NCBI GenBank assembly: GCA_047495785.1 | Contig: JBLDXI010000013.1 | Location: 2,232,001-2,296,000 of the forward strand | Reading direction: 5' to 3' | From: Lepidodermella squamata | Lineage: Eukaryota; Animalia; Gastrotricha | DNA length: 64,000 nucleotides | Translations under genes and position numbers: made by a program | In this document: piece by piece, positions 3,349 to 42,814 of the stretch | How the letters are laid out: every line of letters begins with the position of its first letter | Position numbering within the stretch: the stretch's first letter is position 1 | Notes under the pieces: generated by a model | Database searches by the model: none | What the model saw: the letters and a program-made list of their open reading frames with translations, nothing else | Told to the model about the DNA's origin: nothing

Positions 3349-3790
3349 TTTATAGTTGCGCATTTTGTTTTCCTTGAAATAAATAATTCTATCCTTCACG
3401 AGACTTGTTCGGTTTTTGCAGAAAAAAGCCGAAAGGCAGGATTAAATGTTGCGAACGACAGGCAACATTTTCCCACCTAATCTTGCTTTTGCTTGTTGTT
3501 ATGAGAGATTACGGGCTGTAAGAGGCAGGTTCATTGAAATATGATACACGCATCTACGATACTCGTGAGGACTATGCGCGCCCTTAGAGCTCGAAATGCA
3601 CAAGGTGGATAATTAAAAATTGATTTTTTTTTGTAAAGAAGCGCGTTGAGCACTCGAAATTCACGTCTTGCCAAGTCCTAGAAATAAAGCGTCTTTCTAA
3701 CGTCAAGCCGCTATTAATCTTCATATAAATAGCATCCATCGCCATTTTAGGTTAAATGTCGCTACGAGATCTTTTGAAGCAAAGATAGCA

Positions 3791-6700
3791 ATGCAAAGAA
3801 GCAGATCTAGCCGGAAGAACACGAGGTAAAGAGTACTGAAGCACTTTGAAAGATGCATGTGTAATTAATTCCAACAGGTTTACAACTCAATTCTGTCCGA
3901 AACCTATCAAAAACTATTTCCACCGCGAAGAAGACACTGCATCGTTCTTGGATATTTTGAAGAGAGCATGCGAGACCGATTCAGGTGAACACATTTCATT
4001 CGCATTTATTCACCGGGCTAATACGGTTTTAATAGGATGCATTTTGGTTCAAGGAGAAAGTGGATCCGGAAAGACCACCTTGATTTCAGCCATTCTAGCG
4101 GATCAACAAATCACAGCATGGATTTTGAAAGATTGCGGCATTGAAAAAGCATTTTGGTTCAACTGCTTGTCGGGTGTTGATATTATTGAACAAGGAAAGC
4201 TGCTTTCCGAGAGGAGCAGGCGTGGTTCAAGCCGCCCCAAGAGCTCATCGAGGAATAGTTCACGGTCCTTGAAAACTTCGTCAGTATCTCGGCGATTGCT
4301 GATACTCGATGACATTACAAGCGTTGAGCAGCTCAAATACTATGATACCATATGCAAAGGAGCTGTTTTGTGTGCAATAACCCGAGATGCAAAGCCGTTT
4401 CACGAGAGTGGAGCCGCCTTACCACAGCTAACTCATCGCTTGACTGATCTACCTCATACTGCAATTGTTTGCATATTGTCTGAAACATTCAGCCTGAAAC
4501 CTCATTTATCATGCGAGCAACTGTTTTTCCTCGCGCATCAGTGTCATCAAGCGCCTATTCTTGCTCGATTGATTGCCAAGTTATTCAGCAGTTGCGTAAC
4601 GAAAGATGACTTCGAGCAGAAGTACAACAAACTCGTCTGTGAATTACCGATTGAAGTGAATGGAATCTCGCACTCAACAAATGACCGGATTGTGAGGAAA
4701 GTCTCTGCTTTGCTCGGAATAACTTTGAGCCAGATGCCAGCAGCAGAAAGCGCATATTTTTACGCGTTAATTTTCTACGATCCAGCTGAACAAATTACGA
4801 TTAATGACATCGCCTTATTTTGGGGTCATTCAGTAGAATCCGGGCTGGAATTATGCAACAAGTTCGAAAAATTAGGCCTGATTGATGTAGTCGGAGACTT
4901 AATCTCTATTCATCAAGCTATTCATAATGCTGCGATAGAACATGCGAAAACTGTCTTCAATGAAACGGCAATCGAAGATGGACCGATGTTGGCGTTGATT
5001 CACCGTAAAGTTATCGCTAACAAACCAGATATGGCTGCAGATCGATTAGCTTTGAGGTGCTTGAAGCAATGTTCATGGAATCTGCTGGATCGCATTGAGA
5101 AAGCTTTCCAGCCCAACATTTCCGACTTCATACTCAGGTGTCACAACACCTTACAAGCAACAGATTTCTTAGCGGATGCGAATGGTCGATCGGCGTTGAC
5201 GTGGGCGATAGATCGGGGCGATTTCGACTCTGCTTTGATCCTCGGGCAATCCGCTCCTCACCTAATTAAAACTGTATGCCTCAAGAATGAGACCCCACTG
5301 GTAAAACTAGCTGAATTAAAGAAGTTCGCGTTACTCAAACGACTTCTAGAATTCTGCCCTGAAGCCGCTAATGTTGATGGCGGCGCTTTGATATCTGCCT
5401 TGATTGCGTCTAATCGCGCGGACCTCCTTCGCATCTGCTACCAAGACCCAAAATGCAATGAAGGGCCTATTTCCAAGTGCAGCGGGCAGGTTTTGTGCTA
5501 TGCCGTCCTCTACCGCCATTTCGAGCTTGCTAGAGTAGCCGCTAAGCGCTTCCCTGACTCGATTGTTTTCTACGACAAAGAGAACAAAACCCCCATGTAC
5601 AAAGCTGCCGCGAAAGCTGTGGTGCACCCAACGAAGAACGAAGTTGTCGACAACGGCTGTTTCGAAATTTTCAACGTCTTTGCTATGCTAAAACCAGATG
5701 CTATGGCTTATTTGAGCCACTGTTCTGAGCTTGAACTAGACGATTGTTTAAGAACTCCCATTCACTCGCTGCTGATCGAGGGCAACTTGAATGACAAGTC
5801 GCTGCTATATTTCGCCGGTAAATGCCCATCTGCTTGCAAAGTATCGAATGGGTTCACAAAGTCTCTGCTGATTTCTGCGATCGAGCAAAAACGGAATCAG
5901 CTCGTTGACAAGATTTTGGAACTTAGCCCTGAGGCTGCCATTACGAGATACCATTCAGATAAACTCTTTGAGAACCCTGAACGAGCTGTTGTCGAAAAAT
6001 ATCTTAAACACTATCCGTTCACTTTGGCGATCGATGAAGCTAATATTATGCTAACTATTCTGGATCGAGCATCGGATGACGATCTTGAACTAATCAAGCT
6101 ATGCCTGGAAAGATGCCCGGCCTCTTTGCCGTTATCTTGCGTCGATGTTTACTTAGATGCTGATAATCTGCCGACCAACATCTGGAACATGGCTTTCAAG
6201 TATTGTGAAGAAAAAAAGACACCAGCTGCTGGGCATGTTTTGCTACATTTGGTCGACAAGGCCTTTGAAGAGGGGCAAGCTGATTGGGATTTGGAAACTC
6301 CACTCTTTGCCGCCTTGCGATGTGGGGATTTCGATATCTTCAAAGCTTTAGTTCAAAAATATCCAAAAATGGCGCTTTGTCTCGATTCTAATGGCGACAG
6401 TGTATTGAGCCTGGCAATTAATAAGAAGTTATACGATGTTGTGAAATACATCTCGAGTACCATGACTCCTCTGTTCTTCTATTCAAACAAATTGGGACAA
6501 TCAGCTCTTCACGTTGCTGTGAGAACCAGCTGTTTAAAAATGGCCGAATACACTTTGAATCTAACTCCTCAAGCTGTGAGTCTGGTCGATAATAACGGAT
6601 GGACACCAGCTACCACCGCCTGTTATTACGGTTTCCTCGAAATTATGAAGCTTCTCTACGACAGGGATAGAAAATCTTTCCTGGCGAAAGACAAGACAAA

Positions 6701-16242: not shown

Positions 16243-16700
16243 CCAGAAATGGCCTGAAAACAATAATACTTCTACCGGTCTATTCCAGCAAGCATTTTTT
16301 TTACAAATTCTTTCGTAGTGACTATGAGTTCAATAATTTATCTCTTTATTCATCCTTAAAGACTGCTGAGATATATATGTTAGTTTTGTTATTGAAGTGC
16401 CGAAAGGTCGACAATAAAGAGTTGCATTTTCGAAAAGAGACCGCCTGTCGCGTTTCACGCGGTGAAAGAGGGTCATTTTTTGAATAGATAAACTCAGTGC
16501 TTCAGAGAACATCTCGGCTATTTATAATTCATTCCATTCAAGCGGTTTTCTATTCATGTATTTCCAATAGATTGAATGAAAAGCCGCTTTGAACTTACCG
16601 CCTGCGTAGCTTTGATGTCTGCTGCACTGGGTGCTACCATTTTTTAATCTCGCGGAGGGTAAATTATACCACATCATCAGTTCTGTTCTTTCAAAAGGCA

Positions 16701-19700
16701 ATGCTTCGTAGCTTTCTAGCTTTAGCGTTCGCCTTGGCCTTCACCTTGATCAGCAAGGTTGAAAGTCAGGCTAACCCTACTACGACACGTGCACCTGTGA
16801 CTGCTACCACTAGGGCAGCCACCACAGCAAGGCTCACAACAGTCGCTCAAACAACGGCGCGGCCAGCATCAACGACAGCTCGAATTGCTGTTACGACTAC
16901 TGCAACTAAAACCCTGGCTGCTGTCGGTTTGTTCCTTTATCCTTTATCGGTTAAGTCAAACTCAATTTTTGGTATAAAGATTCAGCAGTAAACAGTACAT
17001 TATCCGTCAAAGTGGAGCCATCTGGTTGGCTCAACTATTCGTCCATCGCTACAGTCACATTTACCGCATCCCCACCATGCACTGGCTCAATGGCTTTGTA
17101 TTACCTGCAGATGAAGGGTATTTTCGATAGCTTCAACGAGTCCTGCTACTATAGCCCTGTTCGATGCTCCAAATCGATCCCGAATGTGAGAGCTTCTACT
17201 GACACTCGAGGCGCGTGGATCCGTCTCACTGGCAAAATAACAGACCTCAAAATTGGTCGCTACATCCACCGCTGTACGAAAGATACTCCTGAAGAAGATA
17301 AGCCAGACTCTGCATTAGAGGGTCGTATCGCCACCCTCGGATTTAATGGTTTGGTCGTTACTATTTCATTGACATCCATTGAAGTAAAAGTATTTTCTAG
17401 TGAATCCCAAGTTTTCGCATTTGAAAATCAGCATTCCCTCTATTGGAATGGATAAACAAATTGATCTAACCTCAGACAATGTTTGGTCAGCAGTTAGACT
17501 TAACGGATCCGCCGATGCTGCGTTTTTGTACTTCGGAGTTGCGAAGGGATCGTCTCAAAACAATGATACTTCTTTCAGCTCGTTCAGATTCACCTGGCCG
17601 GATGCTGATACTACAAACGGAAAATATGGCTCTGCGCTTATCCCGCTATATGGTCGAGGAGTCATCTCGTAAAAGACCACACTCATTGTTAATTTAAGCT
17701 AAAGCTTACGTGTGATTTGAAAGGGCTTATGAGCCTAGTGGGCAATGGGTTGGCTACAGGATTCAGAAGCAAGCATTGGCAGCTGCTAAGATCTGCTCGA
17801 TCAAAAGCACGGTGGTTTACGCTTCTCTACATGGGGCGCCAGAACGAGATTCTCTCAGCCTAACACTCAACTTTACCTATTCAAAGACGATCTCTTCAAT
17901 TTCCAGTAAGAAATCATGTGTGAATTGCCTGGCTGAGAATCTTATTTTAATTATTAATCCTAGTTGTTCGCACTAATAACTCGCAATGCGAATGCCGATT
18001 TACTTGCAATGTTTTTGACGAATGCTCTGATGAGTCTGACAATCGGACTGCTGAGTTCTATTGGCACTTCGGTTTTCCGAATGATAAAAATGTCAGGACT
18101 GATCCCTTCTAGTTAAATTATGTAGACGTTGGATTTTTTTCAGAGCGATTGGATTAGTACCGGTTCTCGGGCAAGCTATAGTCTGAATGGGACAGACTGT
18201 CAGGCGCGATACAAGTTAGCCGGTCTAACTCCAGAGCCATACCTTGTTGCCTGCAGACTATCAAGGAGGAATAACACAGAGGTAATTAGCAGCATGAAAA
18301 CAGATTTGAAAACTCTCCTCAAATGGTGCGACTCAAGCGAATTTCAATGCAAGTCTGGCGGATGCATACCTATCGGATATAAATGCAACGGGCGCGACGA
18401 TTGCTCTGATGGTTCGGATGAATACTCCGATATTTGCAAGAGCCAGAACAAGACAAGCTGCGGGCCTGGGAAATTCCAGTGCGTTGACGGAAGTAAGACG
18501 GATCCGACATATTTTGCATATCCAACTAAATCGGTAAATTTTTTATAGAGAGATGCATTGAAGGAAAATTCAGATGTGACTCCATCGTTGACTGCGCCGA
18601 TAGATCAGACGAAACTAATTGCATGGTCAAGGGAGCTGTGTGCCCCAAAAATTATTACAAATGTCCTGGCTCAAGCAAATGCATTTCAACCCAGTAAGCT
18701 TGATTTCTGAGCTCGTTGATACCAGACTTTAAATTCGTCCCATGTAGACGAGTTTGTGACGGGAAGATCGATTGCGATGGTACCTATGAGCCAACTTATC
18801 AAAGAGGGTAGCCAAAATTCGAAATCTCATTATATTTCAGGAGCGGAGGATGAATTGAGCTGTTCCGATGGCAAATTCACGTGCACGGCCGACAGACAGA
18901 TTTATACTTATAATTTATGTGACTCCGTAAGTTTCGAGGAAAAAGGTGATGAATGATTTATTTTTCGGGAATGATTATTTCAGTTCAACGACTGCGGCGA
19001 TAATTCGGTAATACTAACTTAGCACCAAGTCTCTTGCGGCAAAAATATATGGTTTTAGGACGAGGCCTCATGCGGAGATTACACGTCGAAGAATTGCACA
19101 GATATGGGCTTATGGGGTAACCAATGGTTTCAATGCATTTCTGATGGGAAGTGCATAAATTCAGACAATATTTGCGACGGAGATCAAGACTGCTGTAAAT
19201 TGATGATATTCATCTACACATTGGCCGATTTTAACTCGAGTATAATTTTAGCTGATGGCAGCGATGAATGGAGCGGCTGTTCGATCAAGCCAAGTAATGG
19301 CACTGATAACAATTCAACTGCGAAGGGCAAACTAGAAAAACCCAGAATCGTCAACATCTGTCATCCTTTGGAATTCAAATGTCTGAATGGGCGATGCATT
19401 AGTAGGCGAGAATTTAGCTGTTAAAAAGAATGAACCAAGTTTTTTGCAGCCCCTGGGCAAGTTTGCAACGGCGAAAACGATTGCGGTGACAAAAGTGACG
19501 AACGGCCCGAAGTTTGTCAGAAATGCGATGAGAGCCGCGGAATGTTTAAGTGCAAAGATTCCGGCAGATGCATTGCAACAGGATCAGTTTGCGACGGCAG
19601 GTTAAGCTGTGAAAAATCCTCGAACGGAAAAGTCGACATATCTGATGAAACCCCGGATGCTTGTGATTGGTTGCAGGCTCAAGTGACGAAAAGCTTACTT

Positions 19701-21662
19701 GTCAAGTGCCCATCTGGTTACACTCGATGCCAGACAAGCGGCACATGCGTTTCAGTTAACGCCCTCTGTGATGGTGTTCAAGACTGTTGTCCCTATGAGT
19801 ATTTCTCGTGGAGCGCTTTAGAATTAACATCCGATTCCGAGGTCTGGTCAGCACCAGGGGCGAAGGTCTCTCGTAAGAGGCGAGAAGCAATAATGGACAT
19901 GATCTCTAGTAACTCGACTCATCTCAACAAATGCGAGCGAACTGACGAAATCGGCTGCGAAAACAGGAGAAACTGCTCGGAGAAAAACGGAGGTTGTGCT
20001 GGGCAGTGTACACCGGTCAATCTCAAAGCCGAGAGAGACGTCTGTGGAACAGATAAACCTGCGCGAGAGGTTGGTTATTGCTCGTGTGGGGAGGGTTACT
20101 ACCGCCCCTGGTCGAATACGTCCTTGTGCGTCGACACGGATGAGTGCGCATCAATTTCAAGCAATAACTGCTCTCAGGTGTGCGCAAACGTACCAGGGTC
20201 TTATCGTTGCACTTGCGGTGATGGCTTCGCTGACGAATCGGTCATTGATAAACGCAAACCGGTTGGCTCTTGCGCACCTATGAATAGAGATCAAGATTTG
20301 GTCTTCGCATACACATACGGTGGTTCAGTTCGGGCTTTACGGAAGTCTCAATTCGTCCCCCAACTCTTAGGCGATATTGCATCTGAAGACGGATATATTG
20401 TATGTTACATATCCTAGGAATTTCTAGGGTTTCTAGGATTCTATGTAATGCTATAAACACAGGCCCTGGATATCGACGTAAGAGATGGAAGTGTGGTTTA
20501 CGCAGATCAGAGATCGCTGATAAAATCCTCAGTCTTCTTGGATCGAAACAATCAAGTGCCGCCCCAAAATCTTTCAGATGGTTCAACATTCGCCTACCAA
20601 AACATCTATGATATAGCCATAGATTTCATCGGCAACAACATCTACGTCGCAGATATCAACGGTGATTCATCTGCGAAGAAGGGTAGTTCGAGAATTGTTG
20701 TCTCCACGGCGGATGGTAGGTATCCAACTGTTCTACTGGAGCTGCCTGCCAACCAATCGATCACAGCAGTCGCTGTCAATCCCATCAATGGCAAACTTTA
20801 TTACTCTTATTCCCTGAATGTTAGCACTGCAGACTCTGAAATGTACAACAATTACCTCGAAGTCATGTCAATGAATGGTAGCACATCTGGCAAGGCTGTC
20901 ATCTTCAAAGCCGATTCGGACAACGATGATTGGACAGTCATAACATCTCTGGTTGTCGACTATCTGGGAAATGGAAGAATCTACTTCAACTCTGGTACCT
21001 CAATCTACATGATGAATCACGACGGGTCCGAACTTACGGCGATTCCAAGAACTCAACAAAACTCACCATATGGACGTAGATTCGACGTATTCGGTAGCAA
21101 ATTGTATGGTTTGCTGGGTACGTCGTATAAATTCGCGGCGGGAAACGCTTTTGAAGAGAAGGCGCAACTTGCGGAGGCTGATAAATTCGGGCGGCAAATT
21201 GGTGTTAAAATACGCGATGCAACTGATGACTACGACAACATTAGGATTTACCATCCGTTGAAGGCTGGCAATCTAGGGAGATTAAGCAACCCATGTTCTC
21301 AGCTACAATGCAGCCATCTTTGCCTACTCAACATGAATGGCGGTGCATCATGCCTCTGCCCGGATGGCTCAAGCTCCAGAAACTGTTCCGCCCCTGTTGT
21401 GCCCGAGCTTGAGAAGCCAAGTGTTTGCTTCGCTAACTGTGCGCCAAATCGTGGCAAATGCACCCCTCGCAAGGTGAATTTTCAAGGCAGGACACTAACT
21501 GAATATCAGTGCGAATGTTTTCATCCTGACTTTGCCGGGAAGTGGTGTAACGAGCTGCCGAAAGCGCTCGGAGCGAAAGCTTGCGACGTCGCTTCTTCAA
21601 CTGAAGCAAACTTTGTAGCGATGGCTCTTATGCTGGTTATAACTATATTTGTTGCTATTTGA
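16701..21662 (+). CDS. LRP-like protein, paralog 3 (no cytoplasmic tail; GPI-anchor-like C-terminus)
   Basis: Signal peptide MLRSFLALAFALAFTLISKVES, Thr/Ala-rich segment, N-terminal region homologous to paralog 2, LDLa repeats on small exons, EGF/cbEGF, propeller, EGFs; ends DVASSTEANFVAMALMLVITIFVAI*. Confidence 0.88.
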
Positions 21663-21723: not shown

Positions 21724-22040
21724 CGGAATATCTTTTAGCGGAACCAAATTTATACGGTGAGTGGAACCTAATTTGCTGTAACGGAACCAAATATGCTGTA
21801 TTCGAAATATGCCAAGAGTCATTTTTCAATATTTCTACGAATTTTAGGCTAAGCGTGAATTCTGAATTGAACACTCCGTCTTATAGAGAATATTGCGCTG
21901 CATTCACTGGTGAATTTTCTAGAATTATTGCGGCCAATCTTGAAGTGCTATCAATATCCGAAAAGCGATTTCAGGCCACTAGAAAAGTCTAAAATTTGGT
22001 TCCGCTCACTGTAAATTTGGTTCCGCTAACAGGAGGACCC
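21724..22040. mobile_element. MITE with imperfect TIRs and a 9-bp target-site duplication (Merlin/Mutator-type)
   Basis: Left CGGAATATCTTTTAGCGGAACCAAATTT vs right reverse complement GGGTCCTCCTGTTAGCGGAACCAAATTT; internal GGAACC repeats; TTTTTCTTT on both flanks (21715-21723, 22041-22049). Confidence 0.8.
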
Positions 22041-22934
22041 TTTTTCTTTTGCCTTCTACACCCCTGCGCACTTGATCGCCACTTTTTGCCCCATTACAAA
22101 TTCAGCTCCTGGATTTCACGCTTATCGGATGATTACCTGATAATCTGAGAACATCTCATCAGCTTTATGAGTTCTCTCATATATTAATGCAGTCCATTTG
22201 GAGAGTGGATGATGAAGCGATGAAACCGATATTATTCAAGAACCATTTGACTGTGATGTCCTTATATGCTGACTAAATACCGGTTGTTTGTGTTAAACCA
22301 AATTGTACTAATTTGTTGAAGTTATGCATTGAATTGTTGTATGGACTTCGAACGCGAAGCATCAGGATACCTTTTATTCCCGGCGATCAGCACATCTCCA
22401 AGCTCTAAAAAAGTAAACATCATGAACAATTTCCACATTTTCAAAATTCAAATAAAAATAAATAACAAAAAAATAATGGTAAAAACGAATGAATTCCGTC
22501 CTCATCGCTTCAACAGAACCTTAAGACGAAAGTTCGTTGTTTGCCAATATCCTCGACTCGCCGAATTGCGCCTTCGACTTTTTCGCTCGATCCTGTTGAA
22601 ATTAGCGCAAGTCGAAATCAATGAAGCATGGCCGCCGTCCAATCGAAGTTAGCCTTAGCATTATGCGGTTAGCCTTAGCATTATCATCACCAGTAATGCA
22701 GCGTGTCCCAGGAGTTGCCCAACCATTTTTAATTTGGTAACTTTCTGTAGGAAATTCCACTAAATTTGTTAATCAAATAACCTACCAAGAGAATATTCCA
22801 TCTTTTAGAAAGATACTTTAATCTGCAGCAATTTTTTTTTCTCGCAGTATCACTTTCTTTTCGCAGCAAATCAACGTTTTTTCCGCAGTAAATACTAATT
22901 GAATAACTAATTGAAATAATATAGCCACATAAAC

Positions 22935-24435
22935 TATATTAAGGCTATTCAATATTTGTATGGTATGACATGAGTAAAACGTTTATATCTGTACGGAGCC
23001 GCCCGAGATTTACGAGTCGGAACGAGCCGGAGGCGAGTTGCGATGAGTAAATCGAGTGCGGCGAGTTCAGATATGAACGATTTACGAATGTTATACCGTA
23101 AAATATCGAATTATCAAAGCTACTCGACCTATATTTCTGGGGACAATTCTATATTTGTATGATATAACATGAGTAGGAATCTATATTTGAGTGAAGCACG
23201 AAATATAGATCGAGTAAAACGAATGAAACGAGTGAAATCGAGGCGGAACGAGCCGGCAGGCGAGTGGAGACGAGATTTCACGAGGTGAATGAGTTTTACG
23301 AGATCTATACGAGTGCTTCACGAAAATATAGGTTTCTACGAATGTTGTATCGTAAAATATTACACGGTGTCTATATTTTTCGCAACGCAAAATAATAAAT
23401 AATAAAAAATCCAACTTAAAATTTCATTGAAAAATGGCTTTCTATTCATTCTCGCTCATTTTTCTCATTCGTTCGAATTTCGTCTCGTTTTGAAAGTCGA
23501 TTTTCTGTCCGACCGGAATTCTGCTCGAATTTCACGAACAAATGCTCCCAGAATTCTGCTGCGATTGGCAAAGCTGCCGCAATTGAAGCCGAATGGTTCG
23601 ATAACCCATCAACCCTGAAACCTGGTTACTTCGAAATCAACGTTCGCGAAAACCATGCGCCTTTACAATCCGAAGAAACTGGTTCGATTTGAACGACACG
23701 TTTGGTGGCGATGAAAGAAGGTCGAGCAGTCCGTCGGAATTTCATCTCTGGTTGTTGAAAATGGCCCAGTTTCGGATAAGCGCGTCGCAACGGTGTTTGG
23801 TACGTCGATGTTTTCAACGTGATCGAATCGGAACTGTCGCTGGCAGAGTGCTCCAAGTTCAATCAAGTTTCAAGGTGGTGATTTCTGCGAATTGGGGTCA
23901 AAATGCTGTCCGATTTTCTGGATTTTCGGCTCAGTGTTCCCGGCGCGTTCTATCGACCTAAGGAGACGACTTGCTGACCGTACCTGTTCGATGATCTTCT
24001 GCGCGATCCGACCCACGAATCGCTGCGAATTCATGCACAGCGGGGACGAAATGCTGCCCGATTTTCCGGAGTTTTCTGAGAAATTCTGGTTCCTACGGCC
24101 AATTTTTGCAGCCCGCCTGCCAAGCTGTCCCCGTCTAAATTATTCTCAAAATTGAATTTCTCCATTTTCTTTCATAATAAATTGCGTTGCGAAAACTATA
24201 TCCCTGTGTTTTTTCCGTTAGAATTAGCTGTTTCAAGACCTCGGAAGTATTGGGCTTGGAAATGGGCATCTATATTCAAAATATAGATTTTCCAGGTCAA
24301 AAATATAGATACACCTGAATCTATATTTCAGATATAGATCAGAAATATAGTTCATATTCAAATCTATATTTGAAGTATGAAAAAATATAGATTTGTGTTT
24401 CAAGGTTAAAAATATAGACACAGTGTTATATTTAA
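22935..24435 (+). mobile_element. Non-autonomous element with two G.A-mismatch hairpins and asymmetric inverted repeats (possibly tyrosine-recombinase/Crypton-type)
   Basis: Hairpins 22947-23111 and 23151-23360; inverted repeat 23355-23380 vs ~24408-24433; inverted repeat TTTTCGCAACGCAA (~23377-23390) vs TTGCGTTGCGAAAA (~24182-24195); ATATAG/CTATAT array 24268-24420. No recognisable ORF; class assignment is inference only. Confidence 0.55.
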
Positions 24436-24804
24436 AATCACGCCAGGTGATTGTAGCGAGCACGCACCCAAAATTTGACGCGACTTGAGCGAGTGGAACG
24501 ACGGCTTAAGGTCGTTAACAAATTGTTTTTCACATTTTAAACATCGCAACTTGATTAACGCCAAATTTAATTACTAAAATATACTAGAATATTTATGCCG
24601 TCTCCATCAACAATTGTAAGCTCTTCCAACGGGAGGCAGCGAATGCTCGAGGGTCAAATGTATCTTACTACATGTATCCCGTATGTCTCTGTACATGTAC
24701 ATGTATCCCGTGAAGAAATGCCCCAAAAACCTTTAAGAAATAGCCCCACAATGTTTCTCGTCGGGTAAATCTTAATGCGGTACGAAATTTCATTTAATTC
24801 AATA

Positions 24805-24867
24805 CCTAACCAGTTTAGTCGGTTATTCAACTGGTTAGGGTTAGGGTTAGGGTTAGGTTAGGGTTAG
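24805..24867 (+). repeat. Short interstitial (TTAGGG)n tract preceded by a hairpin; possibly part of a Helentron-like non-autonomous element
   Basis: TTAGGG TTAGGG TTAGGG TTAGG TTAGGG TTAG at 24835-24867; CCTAACCAGTT (24805-24815) can pair with AACTGGTTAGG (24829-24839). Confidence 0.75.
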
Positions 24868-27427
24868 ATGCTTGGTCTTAAAATCGGGGACTTTGAACGG
24901 ATTGGTATATTTTGGTATGAGGATATTTCAAGGCTCTAAGCCGTCCTAATAGATATTCATTTTCGTTTACTATTATTTATATTCCCCGTTCTTTTCCCAT
25001 ATTAGCTAATAAAAAAAAATTGCTGCGGAAAAAACGTTCATTTGCTGCGAAAATAAAGCGATACTGCGAAAAGAAAAAAATTGCTGCGGAAAGAAGTACC
25101 GATCTTTTATCCGCGATAACCGAAGAAATAAAAAATTAACCGGAGAAAACCAGGAAAGCCCCGAAATTAACTGGTTCGGTAATTTTCGGTATTTTACGGT
25201 ATTTCGGTATATATTTGGCCAAATTTCTCCGGACTTTTTTAATCCTATTAACAAGTGACTTGCATTCAGAACATTGAAAGCTTTTACATGGCAATCAACG
25301 GTGTGAGAGCGCCTGCAGCCGTGATAAACTAAGCCGGTTTTTCGTCTGTCCCCCTGGCACTGTATTCCATCGTAAATTGTGACAATCGAGCCTTTCCATT
25401 GGTTTATCGAAATATTTCAAGTTCACCTGGAGCAAAGGACATGCTCTCGCCTACTATCTTCGGGGCGCCGAGTCTCATCGACGCGTTACTTCACATTTTT
25501 TATTTTGTTCATATCAATCCAACAACGAAGTTGGGTGTTGGGCTAATTATGCTCGAGATCAAAGGTGAATCCGCGCTGAACAGCGCAACTGTCAACGGCG
25601 CGATAACACTAGCGTCGCCATTTCTCGATACTAATCGTGGACGTGCATTAGTTGTATAGATTTTTAGGGCTGGCGGCAACCCAAGTGAGTCACCTGGTGA
25701 GGTGGTGAGTCGTTATTAGCGGGCAGCAGTTTTTTAAAGGCGGACGACCGTGCTTCTTCGGCTTATCGTCGTCACCAGTTTGATCGTTGACCTTAAGTGC
25801 GGTCTTCCGCGTTTGCGATTTAATAACTTTTGTTCAAGACTTGATAGATAATTTTTATGATGCGGGGCGCTGTTGTAAAATAGATACCTAACGTTTTTTT
25901 AATTATTGGGTAATTTTACAGCAATTTTACACAAACAGCCTTTATCTAATTGAAAAGGAAATTTGAAAACGCCTTCTTTTTCGCAAGGCCACTCCAAAAA
26001 CAGTATATATCACGCTTCACGGTGACAACCCGTAACGCAGAATTTTCGAAATAAAGTGCGCAAGGCCGGCAGCGTAACAGGGAGGCGGGCACGCGCGCGT
26101 TCGCCTGGCGCCGCATAGTACATTTGTGTTATTAGTGATTCCGCGTGTCGAGTCCATAGTATATTAGTCTCAAGGATGTTGCCCCTTGCGCGCATCCAAT
26201 TATAGCAACACCTCGCGCAATTAGCCACACATAATATTGTTAAACCATTACAGCCTCTATAAGGTTTTGTTGTTGTGGCCGTTCGCCGCGCGCTTGCCGC
26301 GGCGAGGTCCGGTTATTTGAAAATTTAAATTAGGCGCGCGAAGAATAGTTCATCATTCATTTCTTCTTTTACTTGTGCCAAATTTTGTTATTAATTTTTT
26401 GTTACTTTTCTTTCGCGCGGAAATTCAATTGATTAAATTCATGTATTTAATCAATTGAAAATCTTGGCTTTCGGTAGTTAGCACAGTAATTTGCCTGTAA
26501 TTACAAGGCACTGTCATCTATTTATTTTAAATGGCTCTATTCAGTTTTTGCCTTCTATTACGGTCCTTCCTCATATTTCGGTATTTACAGTAATTCTTCT
26601 TCAATTTCACGAGGCTTGCTGTCCTAGCTAAAAGGCACGAGAAAATGCGCTAGTCTTTTCCCGCTTTTTCTAAGTATTTTTCAAAAGCATTTATTCCAAT
26701 TTATCACAACCGATCATTCTCTCAGATGAAACTGAAATTTTGAGTGACGACACTTAATCGAAGAAGATTAGGTATATAATGACTATGAATAATTGATTAT
26801 TAATTCAATTTTTTAAGAGGGATTTGAGGACAAAGATTCTCTGTTATATGACTTGATATTTTCCGACTTCATTCCCATATGCCACCAAAATGATGAAAAT
26901 GATGTAAAAAATAGAGAAGAAGAAGAAGAAAAAACCGATGTAAAATCCATGAACAACTTTGATTTTTAAATGTTTAAAGGTAGCTGGTAGTGGAACAGGT
27001 GCTACGTTTAGGAACGCGCGGTCGTGCGCGGTTGGAATTTAAATTTAATTCTGAACTCTTAGCTTCTAACGATTTGTCCCAATCTCAAAATATGCAATAT
27101 GAAAATTATGAATCGTTCGCTGAAAAGCGAAAAATGTAAACACTAGTGCTATGTTTGTCAAGTAGAAAGTTCACATCTGAACTGCGTCGGCTGAGATTTA
27201 AGTATCGGAAGAGAGGGGTAAATCGGGAGAAGATAGCGGCTATATTTATAATCCATCGCCTCCCAAAGCAATTCGCCCATGTTTTTTTCGGTAGAATATA
27301 AATGAAACGCAGCTTTCATCTTGCCCAACGTCCGCGTGTGTTTTTTAGAGAACTACCATTTTTTTCTTGCGGAGGGTGCAACAAACCGAATAATCATTTC
27401 TGTTATTTTCAAGAGGCAATATAGGCA

Positions 27428-30400
27428 ATGCTTCGTACAGTTCTAGCGTGTACGCTCGCTTTGGCTTTCACCTCTATCAGCAAGGTTGAAAGCCAGGCTA
27501 ACCCTACTACCTCACGTCCGTCTGTGAATGATACCACAGCGAAAATGACAACGGTTGGTCGAAGTAATGCACGGCCAGTACGGCCAGCTCGTGCTGTTAC
27601 AACAACTGAAGCCAAGACTCTGGCTGCTGTCGGTGTGTTTCTTCCTCATTTTTACCGGTGTTAATTCAAAGTAATATTTTTGTTATAAAGATTCAGCAGT
27701 AAACAGTACATTATCCGTCAAAGTGGAGCCATCTGGCTGGCTCAACTATTCGTCCATCGCTACAGTCAAATTTACCGCATCCCCACCATGCACTGGCTCC
27801 ATGTCTTTATATTACCTTCAAAAGAATGACCATACCGATAGTTTCAGCGAGTCTTGCTACTACAGCCCTGTTCGATGTTCAAAATCGATTCCGAATGTGA
27901 CCGTTGCTACTGACGATGCTCGGGGTGCGTGGATTCAATTAACTGGCAAAACAACAGACCTCAAAATCGGTCGCTACATCCACCGCTGTACGAAAGATAG
28001 TCCTGAAGAAGATAAGCCAGACTCTGCATTAGAGGGTCGTATCGCCACCCTCGGTTTCAATGGTTAGTTCATTACTATTTCATTGATAACTGTCGAAGTA
28101 AAAGTATTTTCTAGTGAATCCTAAGTTTTCGCATTTGAAAATCAGCATTCCCTCTATTGGAATGGATAATCTAATTGAGCTAACCTCGAATAATGTCTGG
28201 TCAGCCGTTCGGCTTAACGAATCTGCGGATTCGGCGTTCTTGTACTTCGGAGTCGCGAGGGGATCCTCTCGACATAACGATACTTCTTTCAGCTCGTTCA
28301 GATTCACCTGGCCAGATTCTGATGTTAACAATGGAAAATATGGCTCTGTGATTAGCCCACTATACGGGCGAAGAGTCATCTCGTAGATCCAAAGATATAA
28401 TATTTTAAACTATGCTAATATTCTTACGTGTTTAAAGATCTTATGCGCCTAATGGACAATGGGTTGGGTACGAGATTCAGAAGCAAGCATTGGCTACAGC
28501 TAAGATCTGCTCGATCAAGAGCACTGTCTACGCTTCCCTACACGGTGCGCCAGAACGAGACTCTCTCAGCCTAACACTCAACTTTACCTATTCAAAGATG
28601 ATCTCCTCAATTTCCGGTAAAAATTCACCGCTCAATTGGACATTTGAGTTAATTTATTTATAATCATATATCATAATATAGTCGTTCGCACTAATAACTC
28701 CCAATGTGAATGCCGATTTACTTGCAATGTTTTTGACGAATGTTCTGATGAGTCCGACAATAGCCCTGCTGAGTTCTCTTGGTACTTCGGATTTGTTATG
28801 GGTGATGATGTAAGGACTTATCCCCTTCTGATTATGTTATTAAGTCGCTGTTTTGCTTTCACAGAGCGATTGGATCAGTACCGGCTCCCAGGCTAGCTAT
28901 ATCATGAATGGGACAGACTGCCAAGAGCGATACAGGATAGCTGGCCTATCTCCAGTGCAATACATCGTTGGCTGCAAGCTAGAAAGGAAGAATAACACTG
29001 AGTTAATCAGCAGCATGCAAACAGATTTCAGGAGTCTGCTCAAGTGGTGCAACTCAAGCGAATTTCAATGCATGTCTGGTGGATGTATACCTATCGGGTA
29101 CAAATGCAACGGGCGCGACGATTGTTCTGATGGTTCGGATGAATACTCCGATATTTGCAAGAGCCAGAACAAGACAAGCTGCGGGCCTGGGAAATTCCAG
29201 TGCGTTGATGGAAGTATGATTTATTTATTTCGCCTAACTGACAGTTGAATTTTTTATTTTTTAAAGAGAGTTGTATTCAAGAGAAATTCCGATGTGACTC
29301 CATCGTGGACTGTGCCGATAAATCAGACGAAACCAATTGCATGGTCAAGGGAGCTGTGTGCCCAAGAAGTTATTACAGGTGTCCCGGTTCAAGCCGGTGT
29401 ATCTCAAACTTGTAAATTTATGTTTCCGAGCTACGAAATCTAAATCAAGTCTTTAATTCATTATGTAGACGTGTTTGTGATGGGATTGTCGATTGCATCG
29501 GTATTTTCCAGAAGCTTTTTAAAACGCGGTTACTTATCTTAGTAATCTTTCTACTGATCAGGAGCGGAGGATGAATTGAGCTGCTCTGACGGCAAATTTA
29601 CGTGTACGGCCGACAAACAGGCTTATACCTCTAGCTTATGTAACTCCGTAAGTTTCGAGCGATGCATTAATGATAAAGGGTTACTTTTGCGGGATGCATT
29701 TTCAGGTCAACGACTGCGGCGATAATTCGGTGACACTTTGTAACAAGTCTCTTGCGGCAAATGAATGTTTTTAATAGGACGAGGCCTCGTGCGGAGACTA
29801 CACGTCACAAAAATGCCTCCATATGGGCTCATGGAATAACCAATGGTTTCAATGCGTTTCGGATGGGAAGTGCATAAATCCTGACAACATTTGCGATAGA
29901 GTTCCAGACTGTTGTAAGTGAATTTAACCATTTGATAAACAATTATACCACGAGTATTATTTGTAGCTGATGGCAGCGATGAATATGGCTGTTCGATCAA
30001 GCCTGACAATGTCACCGATACCACTTTTACATCGAAGAGCAACCAAGAAAAACCTAGAATCGTCAGCATTTGTCATCCTTTGGAATTCAAATGCCAGAAT
30101 GGGCGATGCGTCAATCGTGAGCGCGATGGTAGGCGATGAGAATTTGGCTGTTATAGAGATAACACAGGTTTTTCGCAGGGTTAATTTGCAACGGAAATAA
30201 CGATTGTGGGGACAATAGTGACGAAGGTGAAGTTTGTCAGAAATGTGATGAGAACAGTGGCTTGTTCAGGTGCAAAAATACCGGCAGATGTATTGCAAAA
30301 TCATCAGTATGCGACGGCAGGTTAAGCTGCGCTGCACCCTGGTTGGGTGAAAATGACCTATCTGATGAAACCCCCGAAGCTTGTGATTGGTTGCAGGATA

Positions 30401-32389
30401 AAGTGACGAAAAACTTGCTCGCCAAATGCCCATCTGGATACATTCAATGCCAAACCAGCGGCAGATGTGTTTCAGTCAACGCACTTTGTGATGGTGTTCA
30501 AGATTGTTGTCCCAATGATGTATCGTCCGATTCAGAGGTCTTGTCAGCACCAGGGGCGAAGGTTCATAACAACGTGACCCATCTGAACAGATGCGAGCGA
30601 ACTGACGAAATCGGCTGCGAAAACAGGAGAAAATGCTCGAAGGAGAATGGAGGTTGTGCTGGGCAATGTACACCGGCTTTCAAGGCGGAGAAAAATGTCT
30701 GCGAAACAGATACATCAGCGCTGGAGATAGGTTTTTGCTCCTGCGGGGAGGGTTATTATCGCCCCTGGTGGAATGCGTCACTGTGTCTTGACATCGATGA
30801 GTGCGCATCAGTTTCAAGCAATAACTGCTCCCAGGCGTGCGAAAACTTGCCAGGGTCTTATCGCTGCACTTGCGAGAATGGTTTCGTTGACGAATCGGTC
30901 AATGATAAACGCAAACCGATAGGCTCTTGCGTGCCTCCTAATCAAGATCAAGATTTGGTCTTCGTATACACATACGGTGGTTCAGTTCGTGCTTTACGGA
31001 AGTCTCAATTCGTCCCTCAGCTCTTGGGCGATATTTCATCAGAAGTAAGTTCTGCCAGCCAGATTTTTTATCAAAGGACAGCATATGTCATCAGGTATAA
31101 AGTAAGTTATGGCCATTGGGAATTTCAAGTTATCTATTGCTGATATCATACAGGCCCTGGATATCACTCAGACTGTAGATATCGCACAGGCTCTGGATAT
31201 CGATGTAAGAGATGGAAGTGTGGTGTATGCTGATCAAAGATCGCTGATAAAATCCTCAGTTTTCTTGGATCGAAACAATCAAGTTCCACCTCAAAATCTT
31301 TCAGATGGATCTACATTCGCCTACCAAAACATCTATGACATAGCCATCGATTTCATCGGCAACAACATCTACGTTGCTGATATCAACGGTGATTCCTCCG
31401 CGAAGAAGGGCAGTTCGAGAATTGTTGTCTCCACGGCGGATGGAAGGTATCCAACTGTTCTGCTGGAGCTGCCTGCTAATCAATCGATCACTGCAGTCGC
31501 CGTCAATCCTATTAATGGCAAACTGTATTACGCTTATTCCCTGAATGTTAGCACTGCAGACTCATTAGATTACGAATTTTACCTCGAAGTCATGTCAATG
31601 AATGGTAGCAAATCAGGCAAGGCTGTCATCTTCAAAGCCGTTAAGAACTTCTACGTGTTAGACGGAATAACATCGTTGGTTGTCGACTATCTGGGAAATG
31701 GAAGAATCTACTTCAACGCTGGTACCTCGATCTACATGATGAATCACGACGGGTCCGAACTTACGGCGATTCCAAGAACTCAACAAGATTCACCATATGG
31801 ACGTAGATTCGACGTGTTCGGCAGTAAATTGTATGGGTTGCTGGGGAAGTCGTATGAAATTGCAGTGGGTAAACCTTTCAAAGAGAGTGCGCAACTTGCG
31901 GAAGCTGATAAATTCGGGCGGCGAATCGGTGTTAAAATACGCGATGCAACTGATGAATACAACAACATAAGGATTTACCATCCGTTGAAGGCTGGCAATC
32001 TGGGGAGATTACCTAACCCATGCGCCCAGTTACAATGCAGCCATCTTTGCCTACTCAACATGAATGGAGGTGCATCATGCTTCTGCCCGGATGGCTCAAG
32101 CTCCAGAAACTGTTCCGCCCCTGTTGTGCCGGAGCTTGAGAAGCCAAGTGTTTGCTTCGCCAACTGTGCGCCAGATCGTGGCAAATGCACCCCTCGCAAG
32201 GTGACTTTGCAAGGGAGGACACTAACTGAATATCAGTGCGAATGCTTTCATCCTGACTTTGCCGGACGGTGGTGTAACGAGCTGCCGAAAGGACTTGAAG
32301 CGAATACGTGCGATGTCGCTTCTTCAACTGAAGCAAACTTTGTAGCGATGGCTCTTATGTTTGTTTTAACTATATTCCCTGCTCTTTGA
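27428..32389 (+). CDS. LRP-like protein, paralog 4 (recent tandem duplicate of paralog 3; GPI-anchor-like C-terminus)
   Basis: Colinear with 16701-21662 including long identical peptides (EEDKPDSALEGRIATLGFN; YQNIYDIAIDFIGNNIYVADINGDSSAKKGSSRIVVSTADGRYP) and similar introns; ends DVASSTEANFVAMALMFVLTIFPAL*. Confidence 0.88.
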
Positions 32390-33202
32390 AAGGGACATTT
32401 TAACAATAAGATGTTTGCGGGCATCTCCAAAGAATGCCAAAGAATGCCGGTTTGTTGCTCTAAATTCCACTCCTTGCGCATTTTTTCCTACTCAATTCCT
32501 GTATTTCTCTCTTCTTCGACAATTACCTAATGGAAAAATACGCCCTTGTTTTTATCACCTTGTCTATATTGATTATTGATGCAGTATATTTGGAGAATGC
32601 AGAAATGAGGCCAGATGTTCCTATCCGAGAACCTTTAACATAATATTGCGATTTTTGCTACTCATTCTATGCAGATTTAAAACGGGTTTTTGGCCCATGC
32701 CCATACTCTGGTTCAAGTTGTGGATAAGAAGATAATAAAAATAAAAGTACTAGTTGGAACGTGTGATTTTTTTAAATTTTCCAGTCAAGGCCAAGTTGCT
32801 CAGAGTTTTCAATCTTATCAATTTCAATTATCACTTTACAGTTGCTAGGAAGTGATATTCGTTGGTTTGGTGCTGCGATGTGATCCTCTTTTTAACTGAA
32901 GCTAAAGACGGTCTCGGACCTCTTCTGACCTTCGCCCTTTTAGGACCAAAGACATTGTTTGTTAGAATTCAAATGACAAAATGACAATAAACACGCGCGA
33001 AGTGTCTCAAATCGCGTTCTAATAAACAACAGACCTTCGAATTATTGCGCGAACCTGAAACAGAGGGCTAGTTCATAAAGACAATTTTGCAGCGACACGC
33101 GACCGATGCCTAACGCGTCTGTGGAAATTGGCGCGTGGCGTTCGAATAAAAGTAGGAAATAAACAACAAAATATTCATTCCTTATTATTTTTATCCAAAA
33201 AA

Positions 33203-35841
33203 ATGGTTAAAATTATTCTCGCTGCTGTGCTAGCTCTTATTTTTCAAGTCGATGCGTTGACGGTCGAGCAGCAGCAGTGTGTTGGAGCTCGCAACAGCCG
33301 AAACGACCGCGATTTGTACCCGCACCCAAGTGATTGTCACAAATTCATCCACTGCGTCTATCACGAAGACAAGGACCCGGATGCCTTTGTCGTGAAATGC
33401 CCGGCTGGCCAGTTTTGGCGTGATCCTGTCCAGAGTTGCATGCCCGAGGGCTCTACGCAATGCAGCGATCGCTGTTTGGACAACGCCGGTCTCGGCTATT
33501 TCGCGAGTTCAACCAACTGCCGGCAGTACTACTTGTGCTCGAACCGAGCTGCCTACGCCATGTGCTGCCCGAAGGAGACGCGATTCAACGAAACGGCCTT
33601 CACGTGTGAATCGGACGAAAATTGTCTGAGTGACTGCAAGCAGGAGGCTCCGCTGGACCCTACCGCGGCCAAACCGGCAGTTCAAATTGACGCAACCACA
33701 TGCGTAGATGGCTTCGATCGAAAGCTGAGGATCGACACTGTCCGCGCTGATGGCTACTACAACATTGACGATGATGGTACGTTGCCCATCTTGGAGGATA
33801 TTACAGTATGGGGCATAAATATTGAGCCGACTTTATTTATTCACAGCGCAGTCATTTCGGCTCTGATTCTCACATATCTTATACCGTTGGAAAGCCCACG
33901 AAAAATAGATCATTCCCCTAAAATTTCGCTCAAAAGATCCGGACCGAATCCAAGCTATAGTAAGTTTAATATTTCGAGCTGATTGCTCAAAATCACGTAA
34001 CTTTATTTTATAACTAATCGAGTTTTGAGCTCCATTAAGCTCTAAAAAGTCCCTATTTCAACTGGGGTATCTGTAAAATGACCCGAATAGCCATGAATCT
34101 GACGAAAAAAGTCATTTTCCGCCACATTTTGTGGCACAAGAGACTAGCGCAAGCGTGCCATGGATAGCAAGCTTTAGCTTTTTCACTTGCTTGTGAGCTT
34201 GCTACGTGTTTTCGTAGGCTTTATATCATGCCAAAGTTGTCGAATTAATTTTTGAAGTTGACTTTCAACCCTCTGAGTGAGAAATAATCTATCTGCTCTT
34301 CATTACTGGACTGGGGTTTCGCTTTTTTGGCTAATATTGGGGGGTGTGTGCCTATATGGTGTGCCTTCGCTTTATCGCATCATCGTGTCGCAATGGGGCA
34401 CATATCAATGTCCCAAATCATTGCCAGAGATGCCTGGAGCATGCCGGGATGGTGATCTGTCAATTTTTTAGGGTTTGGGAGCGTCCAGAGTTTGCCTTTG
34501 ATATGTATCAAAACTAGAATTTAAATTTTTGAAAGATGGTGATTTTTGTGCGATCAACACGGCTTCTTAAACTTGCTATAGATTGGATTCGGTCCGGATC
34601 TTTTGAGCGAAATTTTAGGGAAATGATCTATTTCTCATGGGCTTTCCAACGGTATAAGATATGTGAGAATCAGAGCCGAAATGACTGCGCTGTGAATAAA
34701 TAAAATCGGCTCAATATTTATGCCCCATACTGTATTTCATCAAATTTAATAAAAATTTGAAAATTTGAAATTTAAATATTAATTTAATTTCGATTATTTC
34801 CATTAAAAATTATAATTCGGAAAGTCGAAAAATGTAAATCAAGTCCAAGAAGAATTGTTAATAAATTTTTTATTCAATTGACTCACCTGATTGATAAAAA
34901 AATTCAAATTCAAAAGCCGAAAATGTCTAGTCTTCTTGATTGTATTTCAATGAAATTCAGAAAATGATGTAAGTACTTCAATTTTTTTTTAATTTGAAAA
35001 TGTGTAGGTAATCTGAGCCCCAGAATGCCTTGCCCTGTCGGTCTCCTGTTCGAAGTAGCCTCTTGCCGCTGCAATACCGCAGCTAATGGCACTCTACCTG
35101 ATTCAGCGACGCGCAAGCCTCACCGCGCTGTATCGCTGTGGGTCAACTTTGATGAAGGTTCTCAACCCAAGGACTTGTCAATCTCCAAATACTACGTCAA
35201 CCTGGCTGGTGACGCTGCCATTGTCAGCTCGCCTGTTGCCTTTGGCTCCGGGTCTCTCCACGTTCCAGGTGGCAATACTTCCTATGCCGCTGTTTTCGGC
35301 TTGAAAAGTGTCGATTTCGGAGCTGCTCTTTCATGGTGCGCTGCTTTCAGGTAAAAACCGTAATTTGTTGCTTAAATTGTTGTTATAAGATTAGTTATTT
35401 AGATGCTCATCCGCATCTTGTTCCAAGGGTGGCATTTTGTCCAACAGCAAGGATGGCCAGTCGACTGAATACACCGTGATCATCGGCATCAACAGCGCCT
35501 CGCAACTGACCGTTCGCTTGAACCTGGCGACTGGCGCCCAGCAGGCTACCTTGACTCTTCCAACTGGTGGCGACTGGAACCACGTTTGCGTTACCTATGG
35601 CGCGAACACTTTTTCAGTCTACCTTAACGGCGCGCTGGCGTTTGATGAAAGCATCGGTGGCTTCACCATCATCAGCCGTTACGCATTCATTATCGGCAAC
35701 GATTTGGGTCTTGGATCATTTTCGGGCAATATCGACCAAGTTCTGGTTGCCCCGTTCCGGTTGACTGCGGCCGAGGTCACAGCTCTTCACAATAATGACC
35801 TGGCAACTCTTACTGCTAACGGCTTCTTCGGCGCGAATTAA
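33203..35841 (+). CDS. Secreted chitin-binding type-2 (peritrophin-A) repeats plus laminin-G/ConA-like domain protein (Pif/BMSP-like architecture)
   Basis: Exons ~33203-33776, ~35009-35350, ~35403-35841. Signal peptide MVKIILAAVLALIFQVDA; ChtBD2 motifs (YPHPSDCHKFIHC..CPAGQFW..C; NCRQYYLC..CCPKETRFN..C; CPVGLLFEVASCRC); LamG motifs (WNHVCVTY..VYLNG, IIG..FSGNIDQV). Confidence 0.85.
33804..34732. mobile_element. Tc1/mariner-type non-autonomous element (~165-bp TIRs, TA target site) in intron 1 of the ChtBD2-LamG gene
   Basis: TA|CAGTATGGGGCATAAATATTGAGCCGA... and ...TCGGCTCAATATTTATGCCCCATACTG|TA; TIRs ~33804-33970 and ~34566-34732 nearly identical; no transposase ORF. Confidence 0.92.
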
Positions 35842-42546: not shown

Positions 42547-42814
42547 AAGAATATCTTTTAGCAGAACCAAATTTCAAGAGTTAACTCCAAATGCAGATGA
42601 ATAATAAAAGCGCTATTTTTTTGAATAATTCTTTAGTCGTAATTACGCCGTGTTCTTGACGTGATGGCCAGGCCTTATATTTCAAATCACGGAGGATTTT
42701 ATGTTCATTTATTTCTATTTTTCTGAATTGATCGCGAAATTCCGAAAACAATTGAAAAATTCATGTTTGGGCAAATTAATTACTCGAAATTAGGTTCCGC
42801 TAAAAGTATGACCC
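42547..42814. mobile_element. Second, more degenerate member of the 21724-22040 MITE family
   Basis: Left GAATATCTTTTAGCAGAACCAAATTT; right AAATTAGGTTCCGCTAAAAGTATGACCC; interior not obviously alignable; TSD degenerate. Confidence 0.65.

What the first reader, a model, noticed from the sequence alone, without database searches (positions are those of the whole stretch)
22947..23360. Two long strand-specific hairpins with periodic tandem G.A mismatches, a shared extrahelical G and covariation: attC-like ssDNA substrates in an animal genome
Seen: hairpin 1 (22947-23111) and hairpin 2 (23151-23360) are imperfect palindromes. Wherever a perfect arm needs CTCG, both arms carry YGAR (mostly CGAG), so the folded + strand has 5 (hp1) and at least 8 (hp2) tandem G.A/A.G internal loops between short Watson-Crick stems (e.g. 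TGAAAT/ATTTCA, TGAAGCA/TGCTTCA). Hp1 ends in GCC-GGA-GGC. Both share an outer stem with one unpaired G (22958, 23157), differ by a compensatory pair (G-C vs A-T in TGGTA/TACCG vs TGATA/TATCG), and several other mismatches are G.T wobbles on the + strand. Established: sheared tandem GA pairs and C(GNA)G triloops are very stable in ssDNA, and integron attC sites are strand-specific hairpins with extrahelical bases read by a tyrosine recombinase. Inference: selected single-stranded structures serving as recombination or replication sites for an enzyme supplied in trans; the minus strand would give destabilising T.C and C.A mismatches.
Basis: partly seen in the sequence, partly recalled or inferred. 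Interest (0 to 1): 0.85.

Follow-up and report, generated by a model that had tools for sequence, protein, structure and literature searches.

The report
Hairpin-ended non-autonomous Crypton-type jumping elements
The two hairpins are the left ends of two small mobile DNA elements sitting back to back; each element's two ends would close into one longer, strand-specific hairpin if joined, a design that also flanks tyrosine-recombinase (Crypton) genes in oysters, sea urchins and other marine animals and suggests a testable single-strand route for a transposon group whose mechanism has never been shown.

Summary
Both hairpins, the tandem G.A steps (5 and at least 8, none T.C), the bulged G and the compensatory pair are real. 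The - strand also folds, 7-11 kcal/mol more weakly.

The hairpins are not free-standing. Public contigs show an empty site holding one ATATTT and different flanks beyond 22952 and 23156. They are the left ends of two tandem elements, E1 (22952-23156, high copy) and E2 (23151-24433), bounded by a 6-bp ATATTT direct repeat. Joining each element's right end to its own left end extends the stem by 8 bp (E1, majority allele) and 18 bp (E2).

The same design occurs in three coral-type non-coding families and beside 7 of 9 DUF3504 tyrosine-recombinase genes chosen by protein alone. Best reading: non-autonomous Cryptons (about 0.8), probably moving through a folded single strand, like attC or CTX-phage attP (about 0.5, inferred).

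I found no recombinase carrying these exact ends. I found no paper describing such Crypton ends; Repbase and Dfam could not be searched. The scan noted this design before on other DNA of this genome (s1-430018, s1-430057).

The parts
22952..23156 (+). E1: 205-bp high-copy non-autonomous element, bounded by ATATTT at both ends
   Evidence: Empty-site joint and foreign flanks before 22952 and behind 23156 in three runs; summed depth 29,000-62,000 against about 1,600 in the left flank
23151..24433 (+). E2: 1,283-bp non-autonomous element of the same group, sharing the ATATTT at 23151-23156 with E1; no recombinase remnant
   Evidence: Joint 22951 to 24428 and loose end behind 24433; HMM and Pfam scans negative
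22952..22957 (+). Left ATATTT core of E1 (direct repeat, presumed crossover region)
   Evidence: 6 letters fit either side of the empty-site joint
22958..22958 (+). Unpaired G directly inside the core of E1
22952..23106 (+). hp1: five tandem GA/GA steps, C(GGA)G apex at 23028-23032; its 3' arm ends in AAATAT (23101-23106), which pairs with the core
23108..23115 (+). E1 internal segment complementary to E1's own right end (8 of 8 with the majority allele G at 23113, 7 of 8 in this copy)
23142..23156 (+). E1 right end: 8-nt arm, one T (T.C mismatch at the junction), then ATATTT
23157..23157 (+). Unpaired G directly inside the core of E2
23151..23360 (+). hp2: at least eight tandem GA/GA steps, C(GGCA)G apex at 23254-23259
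23362..23380 (+). E2 internal segment complementary to E2's right end (4 bp, one A.G, 14 bp)
   Evidence: (I5)
24408..24433 (+). E2 right end with the final ATATTT core (24428-24433) and a T.T mismatch next to it at the junction
24268..24417 (.). Seven CTATATTT motifs in alternating orientation near E2's right end; the motif also lies in hp2 and E1's right end (13 of 16 window matches fall in 23129-24417)
   Evidence: 16 found, 2.6 expected
22808..25104 (.). Host element: 2.3-kb non-coding element with about 80-bp terminal inverted repeats and a TTTTA duplication, into which E1+E2 inserted; not part of the hairpin system
   Evidence: empty-site joints 22807 to 25117

Best explanation
E1 and E2 are non-autonomous members of a Crypton-type (DUF3504 tyrosine recombinase) transposon group, inserted in tandem at a regenerated ATATTT target. 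Shown: boundaries, the 6-bp direct repeat, the empty site, high copy number, and that each right end is complementary to the stretch just behind the element's own hairpin. Shown in other animals: this end design flanks intact recombinase genes. Inferred: when the + strand is single-stranded (for example at a replication fork), the stretch behind the hairpin acts as a splint that aligns the two ATATTT cores. A recombinase supplied in trans cuts and joins them, giving a circle whose junction lies inside one long hairpin. That folded duplex presents the core between a pyrimidine mismatch and a bulged G, and recombines with a genomic ATATTT by one strand exchange finished by replication, as integron attC sites and CTX-phage attP do. 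The sheared GA steps and GNA/GNNA loop would make only one strand fold tightly and resist unwinding or nucleases. Odds: Crypton-mobilised about 0.8; folded single strand as the substrate about 0.5 overall.
For: Empty site with a single ATATTT and variable flanks. Junction pairing is element-specific: the E1-right/E2-left join present in the genome does not pair beyond the core. Three of the four listed alleles in hp1 and its tail that I could place repair a mismatch or wobble (22992, 23075, 23113). All 37 isolated tandem steps across 12 hairpins are 5'-GA/5'-GA, 34 are YGAR on both arms, and none is tandem T.C on the folding strand. Every apex is C(GNA)G or C(GNNA)G. Ordinary palindromes in the same loci show balanced G.T and C.A. 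Of 9 recombinase loci picked by protein only, 7 have such a hairpin 200-710 nt from the gene. Six score 74-95 and one short one 32, against a background maximum of 26. In all 7 a complement of the post-hairpin stretch lies on the far side of the gene. The double-stranded junction has no inverted symmetry around the core (3/13 and 1/13), unlike a loxP-type site. Tyrosine recombinases are known to use folded single strands (PMC2727003, PMC4246890).
Against: No recombinase gene with ATATTT/bulged-G ends was found, and none lies in the window. The recombinase-coding and coral examples use a TAA-like core with, where resolved, a 2-nt pyrimidine bulge on the 3' arm, so membership rests on design rather than shared ends. 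The - strand also folds stably. No circle was shown: the contig running from an E2 right end into a left end may be a tandem insertion. Two listed hp1 alleles (23041, 23058) break a pair unless a partner change, not listed, accompanies them. The far-end complements of 9-15 exact nt were best matches within 1.5 kb and were not tested against shuffles. G.A and G.U bias would also suit RNA.
Confidence: 0.55

Rival explanations
1. They are non-autonomous Cryptons, but they move by the textbook double-stranded circle. The strand-biased hairpin serves something else, such as cruciform extrusion, a priming or protection signal during replication of the circle, or an array of binding motifs.
For: This is the standing model (PMC3212892, PMC13565253), and short direct repeats fit it. 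Similar GA-step apices occur in phage or plasmid-like contigs with no link to a Crypton. GNA-loop hairpins serve priming and protection at Streptomyces telomeres (PMC5449611). The CTATATTT arrays look like protein-binding sites.
Against: The far end pairs with the post-hairpin stretch exactly across the crossover core, with a fixed bulge and mismatch flanking it. The double-stranded junction lacks inverted arms.
Confidence: 0.25
2. They are moved by an HUH single-strand transposase (Replitron-, Helentron- or IS200/IS605-like).
For: Replitrons have short terminal direct repeats, including a 6-bp case, and a terminal hairpin. HUH enzymes read strand-specific hairpins (PMC10288648). No partner enzyme was identified here.
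Against: The same design flanks tyrosine recombinase genes with no other ORF called inside the element. Replitrons are reported from plants, algae and protists and leave fuzzy right ends, whereas ends here are sharp.
Confidence: 0.1
3. The functional molecule is a structured RNA transcribed from the element or its junction.
For: With RNA parameters the + strand is favoured even more (-78.6 vs -51.7 and -94.8 vs -62.2 kcal/mol).
Against: C(GNA)G triloops are a DNA-specific stable motif (PMC3201870 abstract). In 6 of 7 coding elements the fold is antisense to the gene. No Rfam match. No RNA run on record holds the stretch, which is weak evidence.
Confidence: 0.07
4. They are decayed perfect palindromes (MITE or fold-back artefact of genome amplification) with no selection on mismatches.
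For: The likely source genome was made with multiple displacement amplification (PMC11660948; host identity inferred).
Against: Mismatch classes are one-sided (31:1) and periodic. The sequence is present in several independent runs, one contig identical over 22952-23105. The design recurs across phyla.
Confidence: 0.02

Closest known systems
Crypton DNA transposons (CryptonA/CryptonV, DUF3504 tyrosine recombinase) and their non-autonomous derivatives
   Same: No terminal inverted repeats, short (4-6 bp) terminal direct repeat matching the target, abundant non-autonomous copies; recombinase-coding relatives share the end design.
   Different: Kojima and Jurka 2011 found no terminal repeats in animal Cryptons and describe no hairpins. 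The published model is a double-stranded circle. Here there is a 6-bp repeat, a terminal GA-step hairpin and a junction-completing far end. CryptonV reports and Repbase/Dfam sequences could not be read.
Integron attC sites
   Same: Imperfect palindrome, one strand favoured, unpaired base near the crossover at the base of the stem, and stacking of units in tandem at a regenerated site.
   Different: No R/L boxes or unpaired central spacer; much longer stem with periodic GA steps; the full stem needs both ends joined; no IntI.
CTX-phage attP(+) used by XerC/XerD
   Same: A roughly 150-nt single strand folds to build a duplex recombination site with a 6-bp central region (PMC4246890).
   Different: No dif-like arms; the enzyme is presumably element-encoded; the host is an animal.
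Replitrons and IS200/IS605 (HUH)
   Same: Short direct repeats and/or strand-specific end hairpins, target-specific insertion.
   Different: Their hairpins are small; coding relatives of this design carry a tyrosine recombinase, not an HUH domain.
DIRS internal complementary region
   Same: An internal segment complementary to both ends could template the circle junction in a tyrosine-recombinase element (function from my own knowledge; ICR named in PMC13465315).
   Different: DIRS are retrotransposons with long terminal repeats; here there is no reverse transcriptase.

Membership tests
Crypton (non-autonomous) | Short 4-6 bp direct repeat at both termini, present once at the empty site | tested here: met
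   ATATTT at 22952, 23151 and 24428; empty site holds one copy
Crypton (non-autonomous) | No terminal inverted repeats | tested here: met
   The termini are not inverted copies; the inverted partner of the right end is internal
Crypton (non-autonomous) | Ends shared with an element encoding a DUF3504 tyrosine recombinase | tested here: inconclusive
   Design shared with 7 of 9 recombinase loci, but core and bulge differ; no partner with identical ends found
Crypton (non-autonomous) | Circular excision intermediate | not testable with these tools
   One contig joins a right end to a left end but could be a tandem insertion
Crypton (non-autonomous) | Match to a Repbase/Dfam Crypton consensus | not testable with these tools
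   Those libraries are not available here
Integron attC | R''/L'' and L'/R' boxes with an unpaired central spacer | tested here: not met
   The stem base reads ATATTT paired with AAATAT; no such boxes in the folds (definition in PMC2727003)
Integron attC | Extrahelical base distinguishing the strands near the crossover | tested here: met
   G at 22958 and 23157 adjoins the core; function untested
Integron attC | Recombination by an integron integrase | not testable with these tools
   No integrase in the window; needs an assay
Replitron/Helitron (HUH) | HUH Rep gene in an autonomous partner | tested here: inconclusive
   No partner found; elements of the same design elsewhere encode a tyrosine recombinase instead
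DDE-type MITE | Terminal inverted repeats with a variable or short fixed target duplication | tested here: not met
   No terminal inverted repeats

The most novel reading that the evidence does not exclude
A widespread clade of animal Cryptons, found from cnidarians to molluscs, echinoderms and this small invertebrate, transposes through a folded single-stranded circle. Its recombination site is built by intrastrand pairing of the two ends and marked by an extrahelical base. This would be the first eukaryotic counterpart of integron attC or CTX-phage single-strand recombination, with tandem stacking at a regenerated 6-bp site.
Probability: 0.45. Interest if true: 0.85.

Novelty: new variant of a known kind. 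Interest (0 to 1): 0.66.

Why it matters
The transposition mechanism of Cryptons has not been shown experimentally, and the assumed route is a double-stranded circle (PMC13565253, 2026). These ends give a concrete, falsifiable alternative and a minimal 205-bp substrate with a defined core, bulge and strand. If true, structure-specific single-strand recombination by tyrosine recombinases is not confined to bacteria. The design also gives a rule for finding the ends of animal Cryptons, which the 2011 survey could not define. The elements themselves are non-coding repeats of a known superfamily, probably already sitting in repeat libraries without this reading.

Tried and rejected
Rfam: no match.

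Pfam on E2's short ORFs, tblastn and a profile HMM from 120 recombinases: no recombinase remnant in the window.

Exact outer-stem pattern in metagenomes: 0 hits.

Apex pattern in viral contigs: only short hairpins. The longer pattern gave 0 hits there.

Bacterial genome scan: chance hits plus one assembly carrying the coral-type repeats, probably host contamination.

No recombinase ORF was found next to the 120 metagenome hairpins by motif search or tblastn; these are 290-370 bp non-coding elements.

Two protein searches gave no hit recognisable as from this genome.

I first read 23363-24425 as a separate CAC-ended element with a TTA duplication. I rejected this because the empty site removes everything between the ATATTT copies and a contig continues from 24433 into a hairpin left end.

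Literature searches found no description of Crypton hairpin ends; subscription papers and Repbase Reports are not covered.

Full report
Context. The window is from a compact animal genome. The finding lies between two duplicated LDL-receptor-like genes, in a nest of repeats. That identification is inference only.

Observation. Both palindromes exist as described. A strand-neutral alignment of the arms gives 5 tandem G.A steps in hp1 and 8 clean ones (plus one irregular) in hp2, four G.T wobbles in each, an unpaired G at 22958 and 23157, and the G-C/A-T compensatory pair. Within the elements G.A outnumbers C.T 31 to 1 and G.T outnumbers C.A 8 to 1. Eleven independent tandem steps all fall on one strand (p about 0.001). 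The + strand folds at -39 and -43 kcal/mol and the - strand at -32.4 and -32.2, so the bias is real but relative. The program probably underrates sheared pairs (my knowledge). They are the two best-scoring hairpins in 64 kb.

What they are part of. Laying public contigs on 22700-25200 showed four things. First, a joint from 22951 to 24428 with six letters fitting either side, and a second contig with over 100 letters on both sides of the same gap: other copies of the host element hold one ATATTT and lack everything between. Second, foreign sequence before 22952 and behind 23156 in three runs. Third, summed depth of 29,000-62,000 over 22952-23203 against about 1,600 to the left and 2,000-6,700 over E2's body; this is no copy number but points to a very abundant E1. 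Fourth, a contig that runs from 24433 into another hairpin-type left end. So there are two tandem elements, E1 (22952-23156) and E2 (23151-24433), sharing one ATATTT. Which inserted first is not resolved. Both sit inside a 2.3-kb inverted-repeat element (22808-25104) that has its own empty site.

End design. Each hairpin's 3' arm ends in AAATAT, which pairs with the core. The stretch right behind it is complementary to the element's own far end. Closing the element extends the stem by 8 bp in E1 (using the allele at 23113 carried by 98% of depth) and by 4+14 bp in E2, where the single interruption is again A.G. In both, the core is flanked by a pyrimidine-pyrimidine mismatch outside and the bulged G inside. 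The E1-right/E2-left join that exists in the genome does not pair beyond the core, so the complementarity is element-specific. As double-stranded DNA the junction has no inverted arms around the core (3/13 and 1/13). Alleles at 22992, 23075 and 23113 improve pairing; those at 23041 and 23058 would break a pair unless matched by changes not listed. A CTATATTT motif is concentrated in the two elements (13 of 16 window hits, 2.6 expected) and may be a binding site (inference).

The design elsewhere. Most hits look like coral host DNA (inferred from flanking genes). They fall into three main families of about 290-370 bp with unrelated stems that still pair, the hairpin at the left end, a short TAA-type repeat, and a right end complementary to the post-hairpin stretch with a 2-nt pyrimidine bulge. 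The pattern forces two GA steps, but not the pairing or the far-end complement. A recombinase fragment in one locus seeded a search that returned DUF3504/phage-integrase proteins with the catalytic R, H-x-x-R, H and Y motifs. For nine such genes chosen by protein alone I fetched the DNA. These include two oyster loci and one sea-urchin locus. Seven have a GA-step hairpin with a C(GNA)G or C(GNNA)G apex 200-710 nt away. Six lie downstream and fold on the antisense strand; one lies upstream and folds on the sense strand. In all seven a complement of the post-hairpin stretch lies beyond the other end of the gene, delimiting elements of about 1.8-1.9 kb in L173 and L175. Across all 12 hairpins, 37 of 37 isolated tandem steps are 5'-GA/5'-GA and 34 are YGAR on both arms, the context known to favour sheared pairs in DNA (my knowledge).

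Mechanism. Shown: boundaries, direct repeat, empty site, abundance, end complementarity, strand bias, and association of the design with tyrosine recombinases in other animals. Inferred: mobilisation in trans by a Crypton recombinase (about 0.8); excision of one strand guided by the internal splint, giving a circle whose junction sits in a completed hairpin, then integration at ATATTT by one strand exchange resolved by replication (about 0.5). The precedents are attC (PMC2727003) and CTX-phage attP(+) (PMC4246890). Rivals are a double-stranded circle with the hairpin used for priming, protection or binding (0.25), an HUH enzyme (0.1) and an RNA (0.07). Regeneration of ATATTT at each junction explains the tandem stacking under either recombinase model.

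Comparison with what is known. Cryptons lack terminal inverted repeats and have 4-6 bp direct repeats, but none were found in animal Cryptons in 2011 (PMC3212892). A 2026 paper repeats the direct-repeat description with no hairpins (PMC13465315). A 2026 review states that the mechanism is not demonstrated and assumes a double-stranded circle (PMC13565253). I found no paper on hairpin ends, but could not read Repbase Reports or Dfam. The elements work like Cryptons and pass the two structural tests. The defining link, identical ends on a recombinase-coding copy, stayed inconclusive because the coding examples use a different core and bulge. They are not attC sites.

Earlier scan notes. The scan reported hairpin-ended Cryptons on other DNA of this genome (s1-430018, s1-430057, s1-384523). 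The idea of joined ends forming one hairpin came from s1-430018. I tested it on E1, E2, the coral families and seven coding loci, but not on that element. What this locus adds is a minimal non-autonomous pair, an empty site fixing a 6-bp core next to the bulge, and tandem stacking.

Verdict. A real feature and a new variant of a known kind, interest 0.66. The single-strand mechanism is a well-motivated hypothesis, not a result.

Noticed in passing
window 22808-25104: 2.3-kb non-coding element with about 80-bp subrepeated inverted ends (GA...TC) and a TTTTA duplication, itself inserted in another high-copy repeat that resumes near 25110; empty sites seen.
   Followed up: partly
window 24716-24870: Higher-copy segment with many loose ends near 24763 and a short TTAGGG-like run; probably a further nested insertion.
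   Followed up: no
window 33802-34734: 933-bp element with 191-nt inverted repeats (93%), MITE-like.
   Followed up: no
window 21732-22032: 300-bp element with about 40-nt inverted ends; a similar end occurs at 42549-42574.
   Followed up: no
window 16634-21662 and 27353-32390: Tandemly duplicated LDL-receptor-like genes about 10.7 kb apart, 82-92% identical in exons, with related genes at 1-3.3 kb and 11.7-16.2 kb.
   Followed up: no
L006, L013, L015, L020 (viral contigs): Short hairpins with three to six consecutive tandem GA steps and the same GCC-GNA-GGC apex in phage or plasmid-like contigs; possibly single-strand origin or priming signals.
   Followed up: partly
L149:55-235: A GA-step hairpin with the same apex on a short contig of a Candidatus Albibeggiatoa assembly; origin unclear.
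   Followed up: no
L143-L145, L147, L150-L153 and others (record CBDDTI01): A bacterial genome bin holds at least 15 contigs with coral-type repeats, so it is probably contaminated with host DNA.
   Followed up: partly
L175:5630-7850: The recombinase element P0124 abuts a long 20-bp and 16-bp satellite array at its hairpin end, recalling target-specific CryptonV (PMC8869645).
   Followed up: no
L179:7450-7650: A second, unrelated GA-step hairpin element 2 kb from the recombinase gene.
   Followed up: no
runs X2 and X3, loose ends behind 23087, 23090 and 24433: A third subfamily with a different outer stem; if the pieces belong together they show further compensatory changes relative to E2.
   Followed up: partly
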